This document shows, in pieces, positions 9,539 to 53,354 of a stretch of DNA of 64,000 nt. Made by a program: the position numbers and the translations under genes. How positions within the stretch are numbered: position 1 is the stretch's first letter; every line of letters begins with the position of its first letter. The notes below the pieces were generated by a model. The model searched no databases, had not been told where the DNA came from, and worked only from the letters and a program-made list of their open reading frames with translations. The stretch comes from Scyliorhinus canicula (taxonomy: Eukaryota), in contig NC_052147.1 of assembly GCF_902713615.1 (NCBI RefSeq), positions 138,139,885 through 138,203,884 on the forward strand. The letters are read 5' to 3'.

Positions 9539-10176
9539 TGTCATGTGAGAGTACCTTTAGGAAATGGATGTTTAAGCAATGTACCTTTAAGAAATGCAGC
9601 AGCTCATATTACTGAAGTGATGTCAGAGTGTGGGTGGAGCTGGGTTTATAGCTCAGCCATTTTGCAGTGTTTTGGGTTTCAGTTTGAGAAAGCAGCTGAA
9701 AAGTGCCTGGCTGGTTTGCTGTGAGCTGTTTTGAAAGGAGAAAGCCAGTTTTGAGAAAAGAGCTTAGGTGTGTCTGTGTTTGCAGTAAGCTGGATCTACT
9801 GTGATCATTGCCAGGAAAGACTATCTCTGAATCATTTGGGTGATTTAAACTCATAATAGTAATATTTTTAACCTGATGTGTTTCTGTTTAAAGTCTTTTG
9901 GAGGTTTGAAGGAACATTTTGAGGGATTATTTAGTGTTGTATTATTTTCGGGGTTATCTTTGAAGGGGTGTTAAGATATCCAATGTTTATTTAAGAAGGT
10001 TAAGTTGAATTTGTGGAATAAACATTGTGCTGTGTTTAAAAACCCATGTGTCCATAATTGTAGTACCACACCTGGAGACCAAGCCGTGTGCTTCAAAAGC
10101 AACAATCCATTAAAGGGAGAGGTTGGTTGAACTCCATGATACATTTTGGGGTTCTGAAAACTCCGCTCCCATAACA
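9539..10176 (+). mobile_element. Solo LTR (Gypsy-like) with 4-bp TSD
   Basis: Starts TGTCAT, ends ATAACA, flanked by identical GGAG (9535-9538, 10177-10180). Internal AATAAA near 10017. Splits a CR1 remnant. Confidence 0.8.
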
Positions 10177-29266: not shown

Positions 29267-30368
29267 ACCCTCCAGCCCCCACAACTCCAAACTCTGTTGT
29301 TCCAGCTCCTCCAGCTCCCATCAGCATTCAGTTCTCTCCCAGTTATGGTCTCTTATGAAGTCATTGGCCTCCTCTGCGGTTTCAAGATAGTATTCCCGGC
29401 CTTCAAAAGTCACCCACAGTTTCACCGGGTACAGTACCCCAAACCTGAGTTGCCTTTGGTGTAGAACCGCTTTGGCTTTGTTAAACCCGACGTGCCTCTT
29501 CATCAGCTCTGCTCCAATATCCTGATAGATTCAGACCTTGTTCTCACCCGTTCGCAGTTCCACTTCTCCCTGGCCCACCGCAGAATCGTCTCCTTTTCCA
29601 CAAACTTATGGAGCCTTACAATCACCACCCGCAGTGGCTCCCCGTACTCGGCTTCTGCCTTAGGGACCTGGGCGCTCTGTCCCTCTTTGGAGCCTTGTCC
29701 AGCACCCCCTCTGCTACCAGCCCTGCCAACTTCCTTGAGACGTATCTCATGGTAATGGCGCCTTCCACAACCTCAGGCAAGCCAGTAGGACATAGGTTCT
29801 GCCTTCTAGATCTGTAATCCTGCTCCTCTACCTTTGCCCTTAATGACTTGCAAAGGTCCCCCAGGAGCCCATCTCCTCCTCCAATGCCATCACTTGATCA
29901 CTCTAATCAGACATCACTGTCTCCATCTCCTGGATCTGCGAGCCCCTGTACCTCCAAGCACTTCTCAACTCTCTCCATCGAGCATTTCAGGGGTGCTACC
30001 GCTCCCTCGATGGCCTTCGATTGATCCTCATGCATCTCCTTTGTTTGTTGGCAGAACTCCTCTCTGATGAATGCCATCAGCTGCTCCTGGGGTTTTCCAA
30101 CTTGCGATGAACCTTCCCCCTCTGCCATCTTTCCAGTTGTTGCTGTGCCACAGGTCTCCTCCAATTACTTGGCCAGATCTTTAACCTTCTTCTGCCGGGT
30201 CTAGTAACCAGAAGACATGCTACACCCGGGGGAACCTCTTCTTAACACCTTTAGCTGCACTTTCCTGTCGAAGTTCCCCCGCTTTCAGGTAGAAAGAGCT
30301 CAAATCAAAGCCTTCGAGCCGAAGCTGCCTTGTGTGTGACCACTCACTCCATGACTGCTACCGGAAGT
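27143..30368 (-). mobile_element. L1-like LINE retaining 5' end, ORF1 and ORF2 C-terminus; EN and most of RT missing
   Basis: ORF1 remnant (FNKAKAVL..LYPVKLWVTFEGREYY) and ORF2 tail (FASLVAWRRIL). 15-bp TSD CTGGCTAGGC[T/C]AGCA at 27128-27142 and 30369-30383. Confidence 0.8.
28141..28353 (-). mobile_element. Short solo LTR nested in the L1
   Basis: TGTTGTG ... CACCACA termini, 4-bp flanks TTCC/GTCC, internal (TA)n; L1 sequence resumes after it. Confidence 0.55.
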
Positions 30369-35868: not shown

Positions 35869-36870
35869 TGATACATTGATGATTTGGAGTTGGGGACCAA
35901 GGGCAATGTGTCCAAGTTTGCAGATGACACTAAGATGAGTGGTAAAGCGAAAAGTGCAGAGGATACTGGAAGTCTGCAGAGGGATTTGGATAGGTTAAGT
36001 GAATGGGCTCGGGTCTGGCAGATGGAATACAATGTTGACAAATGTGAGGTTATCCATTTTGGTAGGAATAACAGCAAACGGGATTATTATTTAAACGATA
36101 AAATATTAAAGCATGCCGCTGTTCAGAGAGACTTGGGTGTGCTAGTGCATGAGTCACAGAAGGTTGGTTTACAAGTGCAACAGGTGATTAAGAAGGCAAA
36201 TGGAATTTTGTCCTTCATTGCTAGAGGGATGGAGTTTAAGACTAGGGAGGTTATGTTGCAATTGTATAAGGTGTTAGTGCGGCCACACCTGGAGTATTGT
36301 GTTCAGTTTTGGTCTCCTTACTTGAGAAAGGACGTACTGGCGCTGGAGGGTGTGCAGAGGAGATTCACTAGGTTAATCCCAGAGCTGAAGGGGTTGGATT
36401 ATGAGGAGAGGTTGAGTAGACTGGGACTGTACTCGTTGGAATTTAGAAGGATGAGGGGGGATCTTATAGAAACATTTAAAATTATGAAGGGAATAGATAG
36501 GATAGATGCGGGCAGGTTGTTTCCACTGGCGGGTGACAGCAGAACTAGGGGGCATAGCCTCAAAATAAGGGGAAGTAGATGTAGGACTGAGTTTAGGAGG
36601 AACTTCTTCACCCAAAGGGTTGTGAATCTATGGAATTCCTTGCCCAGTGAAGCAGTTGAGGCTCCTTCATTACATGTTTTTAAGGTAAAGATAGATAGTT
36701 TTTTGAAGAATAAAGGGATTAAGGGTTATGGTGTTCGGGCCGGAAAGTGGAGCTGAGTCCACAAAAGATCAGCCATGATTTAATTGAATGGCGGAGCAGG
36801 CTCGAGGGGCCAGATGGCCTACTCCTGCTCCTAGTTCTTATGTTCTTATGTTCTTATTATGTTCTTATGT
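35869..36870 (+). mobile_element. Young 5'-truncated CR1 LINE with open 290-aa ORF2 C-terminus (35884-36756)
   Basis: SKFADDTK catalytic motif, LVRPHLEYCVQFWSP and RRNFFTQRVVNLWNSLP; (TTCTTATG)n tail. Confidence 0.92.
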
Positions 36871-37199: not shown

Positions 37200-38650
37200 G
37201 ACTTCCGGTGAAGGCCATGGAGTGTGTGGTCGCACACAGGGCATCTCCGGCTCGATGGCGTTCGTTTGTGCTCTTTTTACCCGAAAGTGGAGTACTTTCG
37301 ACAGAAAAGTGTAGTTGAAGGTGTGCACGAGAAGTTGCCCCCCTGTATGGCTTGCCTGCTGGTTACCAGTCCCAGCAGAAAAAGGTTAAGGACCTGGCCA
37401 AGGAATTGGAGGAGACCTGTGGAGCAAAGTAATTGGGAAGATGGTGGAGGAGGAAAGGTTGTCGCAAGTTAGAAATCTCCAGATGGAGCAGTTGGTGCCA
37501 TTTATTAAAGAAGGGCAGCATGGTAGCACAGTGGATAGCACTGTGGCTTCACAATGCCAAGGTCCCAGGTTTGATTCTTCGATTCCCTGCTGGGTCACTG
37601 TCAGTGCGGAGTCTGCACGTTCTCACCTTGTCAGCGTGGGTTTCCTCCGGGTGCTCCGCTTTCCTCCCACAGTCCAAAGACGTGCAGGTTAGGTGGATTG
37701 GCCATGATAAATTGCCCTTAGTGTCCAAAAAGGTTAGGATGGATAATTGGGTTATGGAGATAGGTTGGAAATGAGGGTTTAAGTGGGTCGGTGCAGACTT
37801 AATGGGCCGAATGGCCTCCTTCTGCACTGTATGCTCTATGACTATGACTAAGAGTTTTACCAGTGATGGAAGGAGGTGCATGAGGATCGGTCAAAGGCCA
37901 TTGAGGGAGCTGTAGCACCCCTGAAAGGATTGGTAGAGCGAGTTGAGAAATGTCTGGAGGTACAGGGGTCACAGTTCTGGGAGATGGGGAAGGTGATGTC
38001 CAATCACAGTAATCGGGTGTTGAAGGTGGTGGTGGGGCTCCAGGGGGACCTTTGCAAGTCACGAAGGGCAAAAGTAGAGGAGCAGAAGAACAGATCCAGA
38101 AGGCAGAATCTGCATATCGTTGGACTGCCAGAAGGTGTGGAAGTGCCATGAGATACGTTTCAAGGATGCTGGTGGGGCTGGTGGCAGAGGGGGTGCTGGA
38201 CAAGGCCCCAGAGAAGCATAGAGCGGACAGGACCCTAAGGCAAAAGCCGAGAGCGGTGGAGTCACCGTGGGCGATGATTGTGAGGCTCCACAAGTTTGTG
38301 GAGAAGGAAAAGATCTTGCAATGTGCCAGGGAGAAGCCGAACTGCAAATGGGAGGGTCCGGGTCCGAATTTACCAAGATTTTGGTGCAAAGCTGGTGAAG
38401 AGCCATGCCGGATTTAACAAGGCTAAAGCAGTGCTATATCGAAGGAAGATTCATTTTGGGGTACTGTACCCGCCGAAACTATGGGTAACTATTGATGGTC
38501 GGGAGTACTATTTTGAAACTCCAGATGAGGCCAATGACTTCATAAGAGACCATAAATTGGGAGATAACTGAATGTTGATGGGAGATGGAGGAGCTGGAAA
38601 AGCAGCAGTCAGAAGATGTGGGTATTGTGGGGGCCGGTGGTTGGGGGGCT
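37200..38650 (+). mobile_element. L1-like 5' UTR and ORF1 remnant, interrupted by an HE1 SINE (37513-37848)
   Basis: 5' motif GACTTCCGG; ORF1 motifs NRSRRQNLHIVGLPEG, RIYQDF and LYPPKLWVT; homologous to 29320-30368. Confidence 0.8.
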
Positions 38651-39989: not shown

Positions 39990-41533
39990 TGTCTCACAAA
40001 ATTGATTGAGTTTTTTGAAGGGGTAACCAAGAAGATAGATGAGGGCAGTGTAGTCAACATTGTCTGCATTGACTTTAACAAGGCCTTTGACAAGGTGCCG
40101 CCTGGTAGATTGTTGCATGAAAGGTTAAATCTCACGGTATCCAGGGTGAGGTAGCCAATTGGACACAAAATTGGCTTGAACACAAAAGGCAAAAGGTGGT
40201 TGTAGAGGGTTGTTTTTCAAACTGGAGGCCTGTGACCAGCGGTGTGCCTCAGGGATCAGTGTTCGGTCCACTGTTATTTGTTATTTATATTAATGACTTG
40301 GATGAGAATTTAGACGGCATGGTTAGTACGTTTGCAGATGAAACAAAAATTGGTGGAGTAATGGATAGTGAAGAAGGATGTATAAGATTGCAACGGGATC
40401 TTGAACAATTGGGCCAGTGGGTCGATGAATGGCAGATGGAGATTAATTTAGAAAAACGTGAGGTGATGCACTTTTGTAGATCGAATTGGTGCAGGAGCTA
40501 CTCAATTAATAGGAGGGAGTTGGAGAGAGTTATGGAACAAAGAGATCTTGGAGTACAGGTTCATAGCTCCTTGAATGTGGAGTCACAGTTGGACAGGATG
40601 GTGAAGAAGGCATTCGGCATGCTTGGTTTCATTGGTCAGAACATTGAATACAGGAGTTCGGACATCTTGTTGAAGTTGTTCAAGACATTAGTAAGACCAC
40701 ACATGGAATACTGTGTTCAGTTCTGGTCACCCTATTATAGAAAGGATATTATCTGGGCAGCACGGTAGGGCAGTGGTTAGCACTGTGGCTTCACAGCGCC
40801 AGAGTACCAGGTTCGATTCCCAACTGGGTCACTGTCTGTGCGGAATCTGCATGTTCTCCCTGTTTCTGTATGGGTTTCCTTGGGTGTTGGTCCGGTTTCC
40901 TCCCAAAATCCCGAAAGACATGCCGTTAGGTAATTTGGACATTCTGAATTATCCCTCTGTGTACCTGAACAGGCGCTGGAATGTGGCGACAAGGGGCTTT
41001 TCACAGTAATTACATTGCAACGGGAGCTGACTTGTGACAATAATTATTGAACAAGAAAAGGTGCAGAAAAGATTTACCAGGATTCTCCTGGGACTTGATG
41101 GTTTGAGTTACAAGGAGAGGCTGAATAGACTGGGGCTTTTTTCCCTGTAGCGTGGGAGGCTATAGAGGTCTATAAAATAATGAGGGGCATGGATAAGATA
41201 GATAGTAAACATCTTTTCCCAAAGGTAGGGGGTGTCTAAAAATAGAGGGCATAGGTTTAAGGTGAGAGGGGTAGATACAAAAGGGTCCTGGGGGCATTTT
41301 TTTCACACACAGGGCGGTGAATGTCTGGAACAAGCTGCCAGAGGCAGTAGAAGAGGCAAGTACAATTTTGTCTTTTAAAAAACATTCAGACAGTTATATG
41401 GGTAGAATGGATAAAGAGGGATATAAGCCAAAAGGGGGCAACTGGGACTGGCTTGCTGGTAAAAATTGGGTGGCATGGACAAGTTGAGCTGAAGAGTCTG
41501 TTTCCATGCTATAAACCTCTATGACTCTATGAC
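39990..41533 (+). mobile_element. CR1 LINE RT/3' fragment with nested SINE (40755-41048)
   Basis: DFNKAFDKVP and SGVPQGSVFGPLLFVIYINDLD..FADETK motifs; (TCTATGAC)n tail. Confidence 0.9.
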
Positions 41534-44042: not shown

Positions 44043-46854
44043 GGGCGGGGGGAGTGAATTTTCAGTTGCTGTGCCAGCCACATCAGAAGATATTAATCTC
44101 TTGCTGTATTTTTTTAATGTTTTTACCATTTTCAAATTCTAGCCATTTGGTTGTGGAATGAGAAGCGAAAGTGCACTTTAACACTCTGACAAGAGAGGGG
44201 GAGAGGAGTAGTTTTTTACATCTTGTGGGTGCATTTAAGATAAAGTATAATGATTCAATCTATTATCTGAATGCAGTTTACAACTCTGGTAAGATCACGT
44301 TTCGATTAAGATCAATTCCTCTTCCACAGCATTAAATTGACCTTCTTGTGCTTTGCCTGCTTAAAATGAAACTATTTTATCGACCCACGCTGGGGAAGTA
44401 TGTGGGCAGATTCACTGCCTCGCATTAGAGCACAGTGGAGTGCAGTGATTCTTGTATCTATTTCTTCTCCCAAATGTTCTTAGTTGTCGCATATTCAATC
44501 CTTCTGTACAGATGTGAGCCCTATGTTTGCTTCTAGGGGACATCTGTTTGGTGCTGATGGTGTGTTTATATTCCTGAGGCAGTGGGGCAGTGTCCGTTCC
44601 TCAAACTGTTGGCATCAAGAACAAAAAAACACCTGGAAACTCGATGTGACGCCTTCACTGGGATCTGTAATAAATAATAGAACCTGCTGCATTGGACACC
44701 CCCATCTATCCAGTAGCTGGTGCTGCGTCAGGTTTTGTTCTGGCTGAAGAAGCTAGCTAGTTATTAAAGGCTGGTAAACAGTGCAAATTTATCACACTTA
44801 ACTGCAGACAACAAAATACACCTTTTGCAAAGGCACTGGAATATTCATGGCAATTACTGTAGAAATATTTTTCGATCTAAAGTATGTACATTCATGTATC
44901 TCTCTAAGCTGTCTCAATTGTGCTGTCTATTGATAAAAGGGAGGGGATTGATTAAAGTTTATGTGTTATGCCCCACCCCCTTCCATTATTTATGTTGTGT
45001 GCAGCCAAAGTCACAGTATTGAGAGCAATTTAATTTCAATTGAGCAGCAGGACAATTCTCTGGTCACATTTACATACAGAAGGTCAGTAAAGGCTCACAG
45101 TCTTTCTTGCTGTCTCAAGTGTCTTTGATATTTTAAATCTGCTTCCCAGATTATTATTTGTATTGATTCATTGGTGTCATCACAGCACACTTTAACATGA
45201 CCAAAAATATACCAGACATGATGCTGCTCGAAAGGGATTGCATTATGAGTTGTAATAAATGCCTGTCCACACCAACAACCTTATTTATACACATGGGCCC
45301 CCATATTGGGCCTTGAAAGAAATTCATTGATTTTTCACTGAGTGCAACACATCACTATAACATTTAGTTCATAAGCAGAAGGACATTAGCCTTCTGAATT
45401 CTGGTGAGATAGATTCATTCCTACTAAATGAAGCCAACACAATATTGAAAAGGGTTTCAACTATTAATGTCAAACACAATCATTTGGAGAACTGGTGTTA
45501 TGTGTGGGTTTGTTAAATGGTGTAAAGTTGGCTGATTTACAGACAGTGTACAATGTGTATCTTGTACAATAATGCTATTAAGTGACCTAACCATTTTGTA
45601 TGAGACTATTGATGCATTAGTTGGCCATGTTTCCTTCCACCTGGCTGCACCTGTGTAAGTAAAGGTCCATCCACTCTGGCCTACTTGATTGGTGCTGGTT
45701 CCATGTAAATGGACATTCTGTACCAAAGTGGTTTTCCAGACGCAATCTCTCCGGCCCAAATACGTAGCTTGCCTCTGTCAAAACAAACTCAGAGAAGGAT
45801 TTCCGCCTTGAAAAAAATCAGAACAACAATATGTAAATAACACTTGGTACCAAATAAGCCACATTAAACTCAGCTCCACAGGGAAAGTCTTCAGGTCTTC
45901 ATTCATTGGACTAGGCCATTCAAGCCCTCCAGCCTGTTCCATCAAACTGTTTGATTATGTCTTATCTGTATTTGAAACCTATTCATCTGTATGGTCCCAC
46001 ACGCCATTATATCCTTACCAACAAAAATCTATCAATCTCAGTTTGGAAATGTTCAATTGACCCCCAACCTCAATAGCTGTTTGGGGGAAGAATTCTAGAT
46101 TTCCACTATCTGGTAGTTTCATGGTCACTGTTCTGGAGATCTTGTGGCTTAGTATGTCATGCTCCTGCCTCTGAACCAGAAGCCCCAGGTCCGCATTACA
46201 TGAAAGGAGTGGTCATAATCAAAAGATTTGGGGGGAAGGTTGGGATCAGGCTATTGAGTTGAATGATCAGCGATGATCATAATGAATGATGGAGTAGGCT
46301 CAAAGGGTCGAATGGCCTCCTCCTCTTTTCTATGTTTCTATGATGTGGTTCAACAGCATGATAATAAGCCTGTTAATCGTTCAACGCTTCCCCACTAATC
46401 CCCAAAGGAAAGAATATGTGCGGAGATAGAAAACAAACATAGTCACAATTTACTGAGACGAGTTCCTTTAATTCCAGATTTATAAGTTAATTGAATTTAA
46501 ATTCCACTAGCTGTCATGTTGGGATTTCAACATATCCCAGAACATTAGTCAGGACTTCCAAATTGGGAGGCCAGTGACATTTTCACAGCCCCCTGCTTTG
46601 TCAAGTGGTGTTTCCTGACATCATTCCTAAATGGTCTACCTCTAATTTTAAGGTTACCGCTTTCTTCTGTGCTCCTCCATCAGTTTCTATCTCTCTACCC
46701 TAAAAAATCCTTTAATCATCTGAACCACTTCAATTGGATTACGCTACTAATCCTCTATACTCAAGGCAATACAGACTAGTTCTAAGCAACTCTCCTCATA
46801 ATAGAACCTTTTTAGGCTGACCTCAAATGCAAGGTCCAGTGGAACCGTGGAGTT

Positions 46855-47380: not shown

Positions 47381-47889
47381 GACTTTACACACAGACACAT
47401 TGCAGAAAAGACTAGAATGTTTTGTGCTCCTTCTACACGTTGGTGCACTCGGCACCAAAGCCTAATGTCCACCTTATGAGAGTGTTTGCTGCCTAAACAT
47501 AGCAAGTTAATTCATTCAAATCTCCGTTGCTTTTGATCATATTGGCAACAAGAAATTAAAACAAGAACATCTGAGCTGCTGATGTGATTTCCACAGCAGG
47601 GCACTCTTGACACCATGTGACCTTTTAATGGGTACATATTATTACTAGTAATTTATGAACCATTTTGCGAGAAACTGTATGTATCTGAGGAGGGGGGGGG
47701 GGGATTAAGCAGGTATCAGCAGGTTTTTTTCAGATGGCACTGGTGTTAAACCGGTGGTCGTTGGGCAGAGATTGAGTCCATTTCAATAATAACACTGCCC
47801 TGTTGCCGTGAAGGCCACAGATAGTGATGCCACTTTCATTCAAGTTAATGGTTGTACATTTATCGTGTGCATTTTGTGTTCCTTCCCAG

Positions 47890-48065
47890 CTCACCTGGTG
47901 GTCATGGCCAGCAACGATGGAACTGTGAAGATTCTGGATCTGCCCTCGGGCCAGTTGCACAGTCTAGCGGGACATGAAGATGCCGTCCAATGTGTGCGGT
48001 TTGATCACAAGGGAGAGTATGTGGTGTCAGGCGGCTCTGATGGTACTGTCCGCCTCTGGACTTGA
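47890..48065 (+). CDS. SPAG16: Sperm-associated antigen 16 (axonemal central-pair WD40 protein), terminal coding exon
   Basis: Pyrimidine-rich acceptor TTCCTTCCCAG ends at 47889. The exon encodes the last WD40 repeats HLVVMASNDGTVKILDL..GHEDAVQCVRFDHKGEYVVSGGSDGTVRLWT-stop, resembling the SPAG16 C-terminus as I recall it. It sits directly upstream of VWC2L, the known vertebrate gene order. Confidence 0.88.
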
Positions 48066-48243
48066 AGCCGAAGAACCTAACACTGAGTTAACATTTCCTT
48101 CAGTTTAACACGTGCCTTTGACTCTTGCTGTAATGAATCGGATTTATTTCTGTAGAAAAAAATGGGTAATATAATGGGCCCCTTCGTCTAAACTCTTGCA
48201 TCTGCGGCGTGCAACTATCAACCTTGTTCAACTTCTGTCACTT

Positions 48244-48249
48244 AATAAA
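48244..48249 (+). terminator. SPAG16 polyadenylation signal
   Basis: AATAAA ~180 nt after the stop, followed by GT/T-rich downstream sequence (GGTTGTGTTT, GGTGTTTTTT). Confidence 0.7.
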
Positions 48250-48418
48250 CGGTTGTGTTTAAAATCGACTCGGTGTTTTTTCCAAGTAAACAATGTTGGT
48301 ATTTAATCGTGTCAGTGGTGTTCATTTAAATATCAAAGCTCCATAACTATGAATTGTTCGTGTCTGTGTTATTTGCAAGGAGCTGGATTAATTGCCGCAA
48401 AAACAGTTAACCCAGCGT

Positions 48419-48679: not shown

Positions 48680-49279
48680 ATCGGGAAAGAACAGGGGCGT
48701 TGGACTAGCCCCGGCACGATGGGCCGAGTGGCGCTTGCAAGATCCAATAATAAATCCGCCCCATTGGAATTGTTTGGGGTCACTGCAGAAGCCGCAGTGT
48801 CCCAGTGTTTGGTATGTTCTGTGTGTTACAGCGCTGCATTTGCACTGACCCTGACCTGTGCGCTCTGTGTTGGGGGGGGGGGGGGGGGGGTAACTATCCC
48901 TCAGTCTCCCCCCCCCCACCCCGCCAGCCAGCCCCCACCCCCTTCCGACCGAGATATGCAGTTGCTTGCTTGACAATGACGCCTAATGACAAAGCCAACG
49001 TACTGCATGCCTGCAAACCTCGTGGCCGCTGTCCCTCTTCCAGGGAGTATCAGCCAAGCGAGCAACATGACCTGGAGTGGAGTGGATAACTGCGAGCTGC
49101 AGCCCAGTGAGAGCGGGGGAGCTGCAGGGAGGGGGTCACAGTTCCTCCCCGGGCCAGGACACTCACACCTCATGTAGACAGGCTGCAGTGCCGAAAGCAA
49201 AACATTTGAACCATTTTCCAGAGGCGAGGAGCAGCTTCAAATTGTGAACAGAAATAAGCAACGCCTCGCTCAGCAGCCA
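48680..49279 (+). promoter_or_regulatory. Candidate VWC2L promoter and non-coding first exon, at the start of a CpG-rich domain extending to ~52450
   Basis: GC/CpG enrichment, CCAAT and GC-box-like CCGCCC near 48744-48761, and a possible donor CCA|GTGAGG at 49280. The coding exon has an upstream acceptor, so a 5' exon is required. Exact position is inferred. Confidence 0.4.
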
Positions 49280-49700
49280 GTGAGGGGCTCCAGCCGGGGT
49301 AGTGAAGGGGCTCCAGCCGGGGTAGTGAGGGGGCTCCAGTCTGGGTAGTGAGGGGGCTCCAGCTAGGGTAGTGAGGGAGCTCCAGCCGGGGTAGTGAAGG
49401 GGCTCCAGCCGGGGTAGTGAAGGGGCTCCAGCCGAGGTAGTGAGGGGGCTCCAGCCGGGGTAGTGAAGGGCTCCAGCCGGAGTAGTGAAGGGGCTCCAGC
49501 CGGGGTAGTGAGGGGGCTCCAGCCGGGGTAGTGAGGAGCTCCAGTCGGGATAGTGAGAGAGCTCCAGCCGGGATAGTTAGGGAGCTCCAGCCGGGATAGT
49601 GAGGGAGCTCCAGCCGGGGTAGTGAGGAGCTCCAGCCGGGTTGGTGAGGGGCTCCAGCCGGGGTAGTAAGGGAGTTATTGAGGGGTTCCAGCCGGGTGTA
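49279..49700. repeat. G-rich minisatellite, 22-23-bp unit GCTCCAGCCGGGGTAGTGARGGG, 17 copies plus 1 degenerate
   Basis: CTCCAG recurs at 49288, 49311, 49334 ... 49652, with a degenerate copy at 49686. Confidence 0.95.
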
Positions 49701-49807
49701 GGATGGGGCTCTCTCCCTTGCCGCGGGGAGTCTGTTTGCAGTGAGACATTTGCGGGCGGTGCAGGCAGGGTCCCGGGTCTGGATCATCAACAACAGAGTG
49801 GGGAGAG

Positions 49808-49956
49808 CTGTCCGCGGTGCTGTCCAGGGTCCTGTCCGTGGTGCTGTCTACCGACCTGTCCGCGGTGCTGTCCACCGACCTGTCCGTGGTGCTGTCCAGG
49901 GTCCTGTCCGCGGTGCTGTCCACCGACCTGTCTGCGGTGCTGTCCGCGGTGCTGAA
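49808..49956. repeat. 12-bp minisatellite (12 units, 24-bp higher order) built from the RE1/NRSE motif
   Basis: CTGTCCGYGGTG alternates with CTGTCCAGGGTC or CTGTCYACCGAC, and the array ends in CTGAA. Confidence 0.95.
49936..49956 (-). promoter_or_regulatory. Canonical RE1/NRSE (REST/NRSF binding site)
   Basis: Minus strand TTCAGCACCGCGGACAGCACC matches consensus TTCAGCACCACGGACAGCGCC at 19/21, with both differences at tolerant positions. Located in the 5' region of a neural gene. Confidence 0.85.
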
Positions 49957-50920
49957 ACTGCATTCCAGGCTGCAGTCAGTGAAGGTGATGCTCAGTGAGT
50001 GTGGACACTTGGAGGGATTGCGAGCAGGAGGGATCGGGAGCTGCTGACATGCAGGATCTGCCAGACACCCAGGTGGGTTCCGCACCGCTTTCCCCACACT
50101 CTCGCCACAAGGCGGCTTCTCTCGGTTCTACCCTCACTTGCCACCGAGCCTTTGAGACGGGCAACTTTCTATTATTTTACCGGGCTGGCCATTCCCGCTG
50201 GGGTGAAGTGCGGGGGGGGGGGGGGGGATATGTACTTCCCGAGCTCCCGCTCCGCCACTCTCCTCCTGCCTTCATTGAAGATGCGCTTTGCGTAAACAAG
50301 TGTCAACTGAGCACAAATCATCTTGCGAGAGACCGTCGCGATCATAGTTTATTGGGACCAGGTACAGTCTCCCCCACACACCCACATTGTCACAGAATTG
50401 CACTGAGCTCTAACCCTCCTGTGGGCTGCATGCTCCCATTACCTGATCCAGGCCAATGCTATTCACCCGCACACAAGTTGCCAGACGAAAATGCGGCAAT
50501 GTGTGCAACTGGTGTCAATGTTGCTCCCATTCCCGGGCTTCCCGTTCTGTGGAGAGAGCTCATGTCCAGGAACTGATCCCAAACACCATCTACACCCATC
50601 TCCCAAGTCACCTTGTCCTTGCTTCCCTCGCCAGCCTGGCTTGTCGTGAATATTGCGGAGCTGGAAAGCAGCCTGCTCTCGGTGTAATTCTGAATCCCGG
50701 AAGACCGCAGGTCCTGCCACTTTCCAAGGAGAATGAGACTCCGCGCCAGAGCAGGAGGTCACTCTGTCTCGCTGCACCGCACGCCCGATTTCTTTTGTTT
50801 TAAATGTAAAGTTTGACCTGTTTGCCCTGCTGCATAATGCGCTAGTGTTCTCGGGTGAAAGTTTCCCTGTACTTCGCCTTTGATGTGTGTGTGTGTTCGA
50901 GATGCAGCTACTTTGGTGTC

Positions 50921-51236
50921 AGCCTGGGTTCAGGGGGCAGCACTGGGTGTCTGGGAGCTGCAAGGTTGTGGGTTCAAGACCCATTGCAGAGACTTAAACA
51001 CACAGCCCAGCACAGCGCTGAGGGGGTGCTGCACATTGGTCTTCTCGGGTGGATTTAAAAGATAGCATTATTCGGGAAAGAGCGCTTGTTTCTGCCGCCG
51101 ACACCGAAATCGGGTGCTTGACTGAGAGCTTGCTGAGGATTGGCAGGTCACCGCTGTCCCTGCAGCTTCACAAAGTACTTGAGGAAGGTGCGCTGGGTTA
51201 TGGCGAAAGGCGGTATTCAAAGACAAGTCTTTCTTT
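50921..51236 (+). mobile_element. Highly diverged Deu-domain SINE immediately upstream of the first VWC2L coding exon
   Basis: AAGGTTGTGGGTTCAAGACCC (B box), CTGAGGGGGTGCTGCAC and GGTGGATTTAAAAGAT blocks, with tail GAAAGGCGGTATTCAAAGACAAGTCTTTCTTT. Confidence 0.6.
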
Positions 51237-51276
51237 AAACTTGTTATTCTACCATGTGTTTTGCAGTGTGGAATCG

Positions 51277-51806
<530 letters not shown>

Positions 51807-52223
51807 TGATCCCAGTGTAGAGAGGGTGCATTATCTTCCCAAAGTGGCCCACTGCAACATGAAGGATTCTCTAGCTGTACTTAATCCCGAGAATGTAATA
51901 TCTCCGCGCCCTGGGCACCCAGAGGAAACGGTGGCAGATTGGTCGATTTTCTTAAATGGCATTACACAAATTAAACCGGCCATGAATCAGATTGAGTGGG
52001 CAGCAGAACAGTAAGGAAGCCAAATGACTTGGTGTTAGGAAGCGAGTCCCAACCGCTAAGTGATCCGGAGTTATTTTAAAGGAACACCGCCCGCCAGATA
52101 TTTATTTATTTCTCTGCTGATTTATTTTAATTTGGGGCGGCAAAGGTGGTGGGTGCTGTTAAGTGTGCTGTAATGTGAGTGTGTGTCTCCACTTGGGCGG
52201 CAGTGTGCAGTCTGAGGATCTGA

Positions 52224-52394
<171 letters not shown>

Positions 52395-53354
52395 TGAACC
52401 GAGACTAACTCTTCCTATCCCCCTCCTCGGGCCACTCACTCAGTCAGCAGCAGGGGCTTTTATTTCAGAAAATTAAATAATTCCACATTTCCATAAGATT
52501 CACATTGCAACACTTGTCAGGCGGTTTTTGTCACCTGTCCGGGAGGTGAGAGTCAGAACTAACCCCCATAGCCATTCTAATCCGCTTTCTTTCACCGCCC
52601 CGCTTCCCGCTTCGGGGGAATTATAATTGTGGCGTATTTCCAAAGCGGATGGTACAATTAGGAAGGAACTCAGGCACCAAGTAAATTGCAAGGAACACAT
52701 TAAAGTGCAGATGAAGGAGGAAACTGGAGACATCAGGAAGGACACACGAGCAGGAGGAGCCCCTTCAGCCGTTTGGGCCCAAACATTCTGAGGTGAGGAG
52801 TTCAGAGATGGCGAGATGCCCCCACCTCCTCAGTGGACACCGATGTGTGATTAGCCCAAGCCTGTCTGCTCATTATTCATTTCAACTTGCAGCCAGTGCT
52901 GAGAGAGCTGCTGGTTCACAGGGGGCCTGAGCAGAGAACCAATAATGTGGATGGTTCGGACCAGCTCAAGCCAGCCCACAACACCTTAAAGGAAAGGGAG
53001 GGTGTGGTGGGGTGGGTGGTGAGGTGCCTTGAGGCGGGAGCTTGTACTCAGAATCGTGCAGGAAGTGACTCCAACCCCAGCAACATTGAATAATGGCACA
53101 GCTGGGGAGAAATGAAAATGAAAATTAAATGAAAATTGCTTATTCTCACAAGTAGGCTTCAAATGAAGTTACTGTGAAAAGCCCCTAGTCGCCACATTCC
53201 AGCGCCTGTTTGGGTAGGCTGTTACAGCAGGCTCCAAGGTTTTTGGATGCTGTATTGGTTAACTTGATGGAGGAAGTGCAGAGGAGGAGAGCTGTTCTAT
53301 ATGTACAGGGAGAACAGGTGGTCATCCATCCTCAAGTCGGAGCAGATGTCTCCG

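What the first reader, a model, noticed from the sequence alone, without database searches (positions are those of the whole stretch)
49804..49956. A REST/NRSF silencer (RE1) that has amplified itself into a minisatellite in the VWC2L 5' region
Seen: 12 tandem 12-mers. On the minus strand the array begins with a canonical RE1 (TTCAGCACCGCGGACAGCACC) and ends ...CAGCACCGCGGACAGCTCT. Collapsing the repeats gives one ancestral site, TTCAGCACCGCGGACAGCTCT. The core CAGCACCRCGGACAG occurs intact at 49808, 49832, 49856, 49880, 49904 and 49940, and with one mismatch at 49928, mostly at 24-bp spacing. Two spacer units give the variant CAGGACCCTGGACAG. Established: RE1 is bound by REST to repress neuronal genes in non-neural cells, and VWC2L is neural. 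Inference: the RE1 contains CAG twice, 12 bp apart, so 12-bp slippage regenerates the core each time. That would make a copy-number-tunable silencer VNTR, a possible dial for neural restriction of a BMP antagonist.
Basis: partly seen in the sequence, partly recalled or inferred. Interest (0 to 1): 0.82.

Follow-up and report, generated by a model that had tools for sequence, protein, structure and literature searches.

The report
Tandemly amplified REST silencer in catshark VWC2L
An ancient binding site for the neuronal-gene repressor REST in the first intron of the catshark VWC2L gene has been copied head-to-tail into a 153-bp repeat array; it is a clean, large example of a known phenomenon, and its functional effect is untested.

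Summary
Window 49804-49956 holds 12.3 tandem 12-mers, and the minus strand carries one canonical 21-bp RE1/NRSE, six more RE1 cores and two variant cores (9 hits vs 0.11 expected, all inside the array).

The true repeat period is 24 bp, one RE1-type unit alternating with a spacer unit, with a 72-bp higher order.

The window matches Scyliorhinus canicula. The array lies in VWC2L (Brorin-like) intron 1, 0.8 kb past the inferred exon-1 donor and 1.36 kb before the ATG.

The key new result is orthology. Bamboo shark has ONE RE1 at the syntenic spot on the same strand, differing from the catshark site only at consensus-free positions while the flanks are unalignable. Two teleosts and sturgeon also have a single RE1, same strand, 1.5-2.1 kb upstream of the coding exon, against zero hits in 223 kb of background.

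So the "amplified ancestral RE1" reading is supported. The "12-bp slippage each time" detail is only partly right.

The "copy-number-tunable dial" is untested. There is no polymorphism, binding or expression data, and the within-array substitutions are mostly CpG transitions, so they show no selection.

Head-to-tail tandem RE1 clusters of up to five motifs were already described in human in 2006. This is a new, large member of a known kind.

The parts
49936..49956 (-). Canonical 21-bp RE1/NRSE (TTCAGCACCGCGGACAGCACC), the ancestral site, orthologous to the single RE1 of bamboo shark, two teleosts and sturgeon
   Evidence: 0 mismatches to the 21-mer and the 17-mer consensus. Aligns base for base to L007 9886-9906, with differences only at positions 10, 11, 15 and 19.
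49804..49935 (-). Catshark-lineage expansion: eleven further 12-bp units arranged as 24-bp dimers (an RE1-type unit A plus spacer unit B or C) and two 72-bp copies. It carries six more RE1 cores at 24-bp spacing and two variant cores (CAGGACCCTGGACAG).
   Evidence: TRF periods 12/24/72, core hits, site table. Absent from bamboo shark and the batoid at the syntenic interval.
48976..48999 (+). End of inferred VWC2L exon 1 (ATG...MTPNDKAN, then donor GTACTG at 49000)
   Evidence: 8-aa match to the N-terminus of the Mustelus asterias gene model P0104, inside a block conserved with L007 and L002. Inferred from homology; no RNA evidence.
49000..51266 (+). Inferred VWC2L intron 1, which holds the RE1 array and a second minisatellite; GC 0.55-0.65, CpG o/e about 0.5-0.65
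   Evidence: Donor at 49000 and acceptor ttttgcag ending at 51266; composition.
51267..51716 (+). VWC2L first coding exon (ATG 51312; signal peptide plus VWC2L_1st domain), donor aag|gtagga
   Evidence: Pfam PF23333 E=5.7e-22; 103 VWC2L homologues; 100% identical to S. canicula VWC2L.
49279..49672 (.). Neighbouring 23-bp minisatellite (17.4 copies), not RE1-related; shows this intron stretch is repeat-prone
   Evidence: TRF; absent from L007 and L002.

Best explanation
The array is a lineage-specific tandem amplification of an ancient RE1/NRSE, the DNA site bound by the zinc-finger repressor REST/NRSF. It lies in intron 1 of the neural BMP-antagonist gene VWC2L (Brorin-like) of the small-spotted catshark.

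Shown: one RE1 existed at this position before catsharks and bamboo sharks split. A single RE1 also sits on the same strand 1.5-2.1 kb upstream of the first coding exon in ray-finned fishes. In the catshark lineage the site grew into 12 units: first 12-bp units that diverged into an RE1-type unit and two spacer types, then 24-bp dimers, and last a 72-bp duplication.

Inferred: growth was seeded by the RE1's own 12-bp quasi-repeat (CAGCACC...CAGCRCC) through replication slippage or unequal exchange, in a GC-rich, repeat-prone intron.

Inferred function: REST binds at least the canonical terminal site and represses VWC2L outside neurons. The six inner cores keep every base of the half-sites read by zinc fingers 4-8. 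Their 15-bp cores are spaced 9 bp apart, a gap at which two REST molecules bind tandem sites in vitro. So several REST-corepressor complexes could load at once, or REST could be captured at lower concentration.

Whether the extra copies add repression, or are a neutral by-product of minisatellite growth beside a constrained site, is open.
For: Array and core statistics.

Gene identity and species.

Synteny: window 48947-49089 = L007 9355-9490 and window 50234-50322 = L007 10217-10302. The single RE1 at L007 9886-9906 (minus) lies 311 bp from the downstream block, against 278 bp for the array. The base alignment puts it on units 1-2.

Purifying-selection signature: catshark and bamboo shark sites are 17/21 identical, with differences only at positions 10, 11, 15 and 19, which the consensus leaves free. 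The flanks are 43-47% identical.

Single RE1s on the same strand: teleost L001 7855-7875 (perfect 21-mer), sturgeon L004 8414-8434, teleost L006 8674-8694.

Background: 0 hits to the 21-mer at <=3 mismatches in 223 kb outside the -3 kb zones, against a hit in 5 of 5 loci that have a full 3 kb upstream.

Literature: vwc2l is among 57 genes with an NRSE in human, mouse and frog plus human REST ChIP-seq signal (PMC4430910). NRSEs occur in elephant shark, and selected non-canonical NRSEs from the surveyed vertebrates bind REST in EMSA (PMC2926608). Tandem RE1s are head-to-tail, come in groups of up to five, are attributed to tandem duplication, and at SNAP25 and L1CAM recruit REST better than single sites (PMC1557810). 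ZF3-8 read the motif, and tandem NRSEs 9 bp apart each bind one REST (10.1101/2021.03.06.434230). The spacer and 3' region are weakly constrained (PMC3320604).
Against: No binding, chromatin or expression data exist for this locus or species, and the presence of REST in catshark was not checked here.

The inner sites have A instead of T at position 2, a position the 17-bp consensus fixes. They also have G instead of C at position 18, so their affinity may be lower.

The batoid L002 covers the same interval and has no RE1. A bird has none within -2.5 kb to +59 kb. So the site is dispensable at this position in some lineages.

The four differences between the 72-bp copies are all G/A transitions, three of them at CpG. 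Their avoidance of core bases is explained by mutation bias, so it is not evidence of selection.

A second, unrelated minisatellite 130 bp away, and an (AC)n tract at the same spot in bamboo shark, show the region makes repeats regardless of function.
Confidence: 0.72

Rival explanations
1. Neutral minisatellite growth. Only the ancestral terminal RE1 (49936-49956) matters for REST. The other eleven units are a by-product of slippage or unequal exchange in a repeat-prone GC-rich intron, and they add little or no binding or repression.
For: An unrelated 23-bp minisatellite lies 130 bp away. Bamboo shark has an (AC)n tract at exactly this spot. The inner sites deviate from the 17-mer at position 2. 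Within-array substitutions are mostly CpG transitions with no demonstrable constraint. Array identity (85% at period 24) is similar to that of the neighbouring array (88%).
Against: All seven A-type units keep all 13 specified core bases. The conserved sturgeon orthologue also has A at position 2. Published tandem RE1s recruit REST better than single sites, and tandem NRSEs are co-occupied in vitro.
Confidence: 0.4
2. Adaptive, copy-number-variable silencer. Array length is polymorphic among catsharks and quantitatively sets how tightly VWC2L is restricted to neurons.
For: Minisatellites are often length-polymorphic (general knowledge). The human MIR137 internal promoter VNTR is REST-bound, and 4- and 12-copy alleles were compared in reporters (PMC4393679).
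Against: No second individual or species could be examined. DNA for S. torazame, Mustelus and Cetorhinus was not retrievable, and an ORF-based search for independent assemblies found nothing. The 72-bp copies are already about 7% diverged, so the array is old and not visibly dynamic.
Confidence: 0.1
3. The repeat is part of a transposable element or a genome-wide satellite that happens to contain an RE1-like word.
For: TE-borne RE1 families are common in mammals (PMC1557810), and the window is rich in SINE and LINE copies.
Against: No other copy of the unit or its flanks occurs in the window. The site lies in a single-copy syntenic interval bounded by blocks conserved with bamboo shark and a batoid, and the RE1 itself is orthologous. 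Only 64 kb of this genome could be searched, so a genome-wide absence was not tested.
Confidence: 0.03
4. The array is a coding repeat, for example the Cys-rich CPRCCPGSCPWCC... frame on the plus strand or the STADSTADRSVD... frame on the minus strand.
For: The period is a multiple of 3, and all frames are open across the array.
Against: No Pfam hit for any spanning ORF. No homologue of the minus-frame 140-aa ORF in 5.8 billion proteins. The plus-frame ORF has no ATG. The array is absent from the orthologous intervals of two other chondrichthyans, and it lies inside an intron of VWC2L.
Confidence: 0.02

Closest known systems
Human tandem RE1 clusters (Johnson et al. 2006, NAR, PMC1557810; SNAP25 and L1CAM pairs from Bruce et al. 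2004)
   Same: Several RE1s lie within 100 bp, all head-to-tail, beside neuronal genes, and are attributed to local tandem duplication. They are proposed to recruit REST at low concentration or to load several complexes.
   Different: The human groups have at most five motifs and variable spacing. Here there are seven cores (plus two variants) in a regular 24-bp/72-bp higher-order minisatellite, in a shark, and the single-copy ancestral state is directly visible in an outgroup.
Tandem NRSEs of CELSR3 exon 1 and PCDH-gamma-a exons (Tang et al. 2021, bioRxiv 10.1101/2021.03.06.434230)
   Same: Adjacent NRSEs are separated by about 9 bp, and each binds one REST molecule in one orientation in EMSA. 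The core-to-core gap in this array is also 9 bp.
   Different: Those are two sites, partly non-canonical (split half-sites), and they lie in exons. Binding was shown there and was not shown here.
REST-bound VNTR in the human MIR137 internal promoter (Warburton et al. 2014, PMC4393679)
   Same: A tandem repeat in the 5' region of a neural gene that overlaps REST occupancy, with alleles of different copy number.
   Different: In the passages read, the MIR137 15-bp unit is not described as an RE1; REST binding is reported over and adjacent to the VNTR. In the catshark array the RE1 itself is the amplified unit, and polymorphism is unknown.
TE-borne RE1 families (LINE2, ERV, Alu; PMC1557810)
   Same: RE1 copy number increases through DNA duplication.
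   Different: Those copies are dispersed by transposition to new target genes. Here the copies stay in place at one old target gene, and no TE is involved.

Membership tests
RE1/NRSE (REST-binding element) | Match to the 17-bp consensus NTYAGMRCCNNRGMSAG and to the canonical 21-mer | tested here: met
   Site 49936-49956 has 0 mismatches to both. The six inner A-type sites have 1 mismatch to the 17-mer (position 2, T to A) with all 13 core bases intact.
RE1/NRSE (REST-binding element) | Evolutionary conservation of the motif at the orthologous locus, with change confined to degenerate positions | tested here: met
   Bamboo shark syntenic site is 17/21 identical, with differences only at positions 10, 11, 15 and 19, and flanks 43-47% identical. 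Single same-strand sites occur in two teleosts and sturgeon, against 0 background hits in 223 kb.
RE1/NRSE (REST-binding element) | Association with a neuron-restricted target gene | tested here: met
   Gene identity tested. Neural specificity and REST-target status come from the literature (PMC5407822; PMC4430910) and were not measured in catshark.
RE1/NRSE (REST-binding element) | Physical binding by REST (EMSA or ChIP) and REST-dependent repression | not testable with these tools
   No binding or expression data are available. The presence of a REST orthologue in S. canicula was not checked.
Tandem RE1 cluster (Johnson 2006) | Two or more RE1s within 100 bp, head-to-tail | tested here: met
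   All nine core hits are on the minus strand within 147 bp, and seven have the CAGCACC left half.
Tandem RE1 cluster (Johnson 2006) | Origin by local tandem duplication and not by transposition | tested here: met
   The outgroup has a single copy at the syntenic site. TRF shows a higher-order structure. No dispersed copies occur in the window.
VNTR (variable-number tandem repeat) | Copy number differs among individuals | not testable with these tools
   Only one assembly is available. Congener and same-order genomes returned no DNA, and the ORF search for independent assemblies was empty.
TE-derived RE1 | The site is embedded in a repeated element with shared flanks | tested here: not met
   The flanks are single-copy in the window and syntenic with other chondrichthyans. 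This was not tested genome-wide.

The most novel reading that the evidence does not exclude
The array is a length-polymorphic, dosage-acting silencer. Each added 24-bp dimer adds one occupiable REST site, so alleles differ in how much REST they hold, and therefore in the REST concentration at which VWC2L (a BMP antagonist) is released during neurogenesis. That would be a heritable rheostat on a neural patterning gene, created by the RE1's own internal 12-bp periodicity.
Probability: 0.1. Interest if true: 0.65.

Novelty: new member of a known kind. Interest (0 to 1): 0.42.

Why it matters
This is an unusually clean natural example of how a transcription-factor site multiplies in place. The single-copy ancestor is visible in a sister shark order and in ray-finned fishes, and the stepwise 12, 24 and 72-bp growth is still legible. 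The canonical RE1 turns out to carry its own 12-bp quasi-repeat, which gives a mechanistic reason why head-to-tail RE1 clusters recur; a teleost orthologue also shows a pair.

It also supports the idea that REST control of VWC2L/Brorin-like is old, shared between cartilaginous and ray-finned fishes.

If the extra copies add REST loading, the locus would be a ready-made natural series (1 site in bamboo shark, 7 to 9 in catshark) for testing how site number translates into repression. None of this overturns current understanding.

Tried and rejected
1. Coding reading. Pfam was run on five ORFs around and over the array, and the 140-aa spanning ORF was searched against 5.8 billion proteins. Both gave nothing, so this reading was rejected.

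2. Hairpin-driven slippage. Unit A's CACCG is complementary to unit B's CGGTG, but the array strand folds no better than shuffles (z = 0.10). Rejected.

3. Selection inferred from within-array substitutions. The four differences between the 72-bp copies avoid the core bases, but three are CpG transitions. That is not usable as evidence.

4. Independent assemblies or polymorphism via called ORFs: empty.

5. Dating the expansion with S. torazame, Mustelus asterias, Cetorhinus maximus and Hemitrygon. DNA was not retrievable because the sample files were too large. Lamprey was not on record.

6. A proper position weight matrix. The supplements of PMC1557810 and PMC2926608 are not held. Site quality was therefore judged from the published consensus and the zinc-finger contact map, not from a JASPAR score.

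7. Earlier scan notes by place, words and sequence: blank.

8. A precursor of the neighbouring 23-bp minisatellite in the outgroups: none found.

9. A decayed RE1 in the batoid. The best candidate is L002 868-888, which is 14/21 identical to the bamboo shark site. Against the consensus it is no better than shuffles, so this stays unresolved.

Full report
**1. What is there**

TRF reports a tandem array at window 49807-49954. It scores period 12 (12.3 copies, 69% matches), period 24 (5.8 copies, 85%) and period 72 (1.9 copies, 93%). Read on the minus strand, the thirteen 12-mers are:
- u1 TTCAGCACCGCG
- u2 GACAGCACCGCA
- u3 GACAGGTCGGTG
- u4 GACAGCACCGCG
- u5 GACAGGACCCTG
- u6 GACAGCACCACG
- u7 GACAGGTCGGTG
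- u8 GACAGCACCGCG
- u9 GACAGGTCGGTA
- u10 GACAGCACCACG
- u11 GACAGGACCCTG
- u12 GACAGCACCGCG
- tail GACAGCTCTCCC

So an RE1-type unit A (seven copies) alternates with spacer units B (three copies) or C (two copies). The real repeating unit is a 24-bp dimer.

Because every unit starts with GACAG, each A unit together with the next five bases forms the RE1 core CAGCACCNNGGACAG. That pattern, with one mismatch allowed, occurs 9 times in the window, all inside the array and all on the minus strand. The expectation from shuffles is 0.11.

**2. Quality of the sites**

I used the published 17-bp consensus NTYAGMRCCNNRGMSAG (quoted in PMC4430910) and the canonical 21-mer.
- Site u1 (49936-49956, TTCAGCACCGCGGACAGCACC) is perfect against both.
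- The six inner A-type sites miss only position 2 of the 17-mer (A for T). In the 21-mer they also miss position 18 and sometimes 21.
- The two C-unit sites (CAGGACCCTGGACAGCACC) miss positions 2 and 6.

Published work describes two strongly constrained half-sites with a weakly constrained spacer and 3' region (PMC3320604). It also shows that ZF7-8 read six left-half bases, ZF6 reads the C at position 9 and ZF3-5 read the right half, with ZF1-2 contributing little (10.1101/2021.03.06.434230).

On that map the inner sites keep every base read by ZF4-8. This is my inference from the paper's description. No position weight matrix could be obtained.

**3. Gene context**

ORF 51312-51809 (+) hits Pfam VWC2L_1st at E = 5.7e-22. 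It has 103 VWC2L homologues. Its exon part is 134/134 identical to Scyliorhinus canicula VWC2L, so the window is catshark or a near twin. A protein tree puts it in a 99/99-supported chondrichthyan clade.

The coding exon is 51267-51716, with acceptor ttttgcag and donor aag|gtagga.

The Mustelus asterias gene model begins MTPNDKAD. This matches window 48976-48999 (MTPNDKAN) inside a block conserved with bamboo shark and a batoid, and a conserved GTACTG follows it directly.

That places the end of exon 1 at 48999 and intron 1 at 49000-51266. The array is then 805-957 bp into intron 1 and 1,356 bp upstream of the ATG. This structure is inferred from homology and has no RNA support.

The surrounding 48.6-51.6 kb has GC 0.53-0.65 and CpG o/e of about 0.4-0.7.

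**4. The decisive comparison**

I fetched orthologous VWC2L loci through exact-protein look-ups.

In Chiloscyllium punctatum (L007), two conserved non-coding blocks bracket the interval: window 48947-49089 = L007 9355-9490, and window 50234-50322 = L007 10217-10302. Between them lies one RE1, TTCAGCACCAAGGAGAGCGCC, on the minus strand at 9886-9906. It is 311 bp from the downstream block, against 278 bp for the catshark array.

The base alignment runs from the downstream block straight into u1-u2 of the array. The two sites are 17/21 identical and differ only at positions 10 and 11 (spacer), 15 (S in the consensus) and 19 (N). The 30-100 bp proximal flanks are 43-47% identical. That is the pattern expected of a site held by selection for a REST-like reader.

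Distal to its RE1, bamboo shark has an (AC)n microsatellite where catshark has the array.

Single RE1s on the same strand also occur in:
- a teleost (L001 7855-7875, a perfect 21-mer with the same GC spacer),
- sturgeon (L004 8414-8434, TACAGCACCATGGACAGCGTC, which has A at position 2 like the catshark inner units),
- a second teleost (L006 8674-8694, weaker, 3 mismatches).

All three lie 1.5-2.1 kb upstream of the coding exon.

Outside the -3 kb zones, 223 kb of fetched sequence holds no 21-mer hit at <=3 mismatches. All five loci with a full 3 kb upstream hold one.

Exceptions:
- A batoid contig (L002) spans the same interval, with both flanking blocks present. It has neither minisatellite nor an RE1. 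Its best candidate relic (868-888) is not better than chance.
- A bird has none from -2.5 to +59 kb.

**5. History of the array**

By alignment, u1-u2 correspond to the ancestral RE1 plus its 3' flank. The rest is expansion.

The canonical RE1 carries a 12-bp quasi-repeat: CAGCACC at positions 3-9 and CAGCRCC at positions 15-21. In the single-copy orthologues the two successive 12-mers are 4-7/12 identical, and in catshark they are 11/12.

However, the A, B and C units differ by 25-33%, while the two 72-bp copies differ at only 4 of 60 positions. So growth went from old 12-bp steps to 24-bp dimers and then to a late 72-bp duplication. It was not twelve equal 12-bp slips.

The four recent differences are all G/A transitions, three at CpG, so they say nothing about selection. 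Strand self-pairing is unremarkable (z = 0.10).

A teleost orthologue (L001) has a degenerate second RE1 head-to-tail, 31 bp from the first. This hints that the site has duplicated more than once.

**6. Function**

VWC2L/Brorin-like is described as a neural-specific BMP antagonist (Miwa 2009, cited in PMC5407822). It is listed among 57 genes that have an NRSE within 100 kb in human, mouse and frog and also have human REST ChIP-seq support (PMC4430910). NRSEs are reported in elephant shark (PMC2926608).

[quoted passage not shown] Tandem NRSEs 9 bp apart each bind one REST molecule in EMSA.

In this array the 15-bp cores start every 24 bp, leaving 9-bp gaps, so up to six or seven simultaneous occupants are sterically plausible. 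Sites offset by 12 bp (u1/u2, and the C-unit variants against their neighbours) overlap and must be mutually exclusive.

All of this is inference. Nothing here shows binding or repression in catshark.

**7. Rivals**

- Coding repeat: rejected.
- TE or satellite: unlikely given synteny and the single-copy flanks, but a genome-wide search was not possible.
- Neutral expansion beside one functional site: a serious rival. An unrelated 23-bp minisatellite lies 130 bp away, a microsatellite sits at the same spot in bamboo shark, and there is no detectable constraint on the extra copies.
- The 'tunable dial': no support yet.

**8. Novelty**

Head-to-tail tandem RE1 clusters, in groups of up to five and attributed to tandem duplication, were reported for human in 2006. 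A REST-bound promoter VNTR is known at MIR137.

This locus is a larger and more regular example, in a cartilaginous fish, with its single-copy ancestor documented. I rate it a new member of a known kind, with moderate interest.

Noticed in passing
window 49279-49672: A second minisatellite in the same intron: 23-bp unit AGTGAAGGGGCTCCAGCCGGGGT x17.4, with a 91-bp higher order. It is unrelated to RE1, absent from bamboo shark and the batoid, and no single-copy precursor was found.
   Followed up: partly
window 52234-52399: A conserved non-coding element in VWC2L intron 2. It is 88% identical to bamboo shark (L007 12498-12656), 81% to a batoid (L002 3316-3481) and 79% over 135 bp to a bird (L005 21271-21405). 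It is a candidate deep-vertebrate enhancer.
   Followed up: no
window 48976-48999 spliced to 51267-51287: The exon-1 ATG reads MTPNDKAN then CGIDGQL-stop in catshark, a 15-codon upstream ORF before the main ATG at 51312. In the Mustelus model the same ATG is in frame (CAG instead of TAG) and gives an N-terminal extension.
   Followed up: partly
L001 7825-7875 (teleost, minus strand): A head-to-tail RE1 pair: a perfect 21-mer, a 10-bp gap, then CTCGGCACCACGGCCAGAGC (11/13 identical over GCACCNNGGNCAG). This suggests an independent local duplication of the same orthologous site.
   Followed up: partly
L007 9775-9853 (bamboo shark): An (AC)n / 14-bp compound microsatellite lies immediately distal to the single RE1, at the position where catshark has the RE1 array. 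The spot is repeat-prone in both lineages.
   Followed up: no
L002 868-888 (batoid, minus strand): TTCAACACGAAGCCCCGCGCG at the syntenic place is 14/21 identical to the bamboo shark RE1, including the AA spacer, but its right half is destroyed. It may be a decayed relic, though against the consensus it is no better than shuffled sequence.
   Followed up: partly
window 29338-30237 and 37333-38560: A series of inverted-repeat arms (77-200 nt, 80-88% complementary) enclose about 7-9 kb that contains a reverse-transcriptase-like ORF (35884-36756). This may be a large inverted duplication or a TE with long inverted ends.
   Followed up: no
window 7814, 37510, 40752, 53352, 53761, 62888 and others: Many copies of a tRNA-derived SINE family with a conserved ...GGTTTCCTCCCACA core, plus LINE RT fragments (35884-36756, 40196-40768). 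The same SINE occurs repeatedly in bamboo shark L007.
   Followed up: no
gene tables (Hemitrygon, Mustelus, Cetorhinus): A large WD40-repeat gene ends 0.8-2.8 kb upstream of VWC2L on the same strand in three chondrichthyans. Window blocks 44288-45542 and 47481-48338, conserved with L007, may be its 3' end. My guess from mammalian synteny is that it is SPAG16-like; this was not tested.
   Followed up: no
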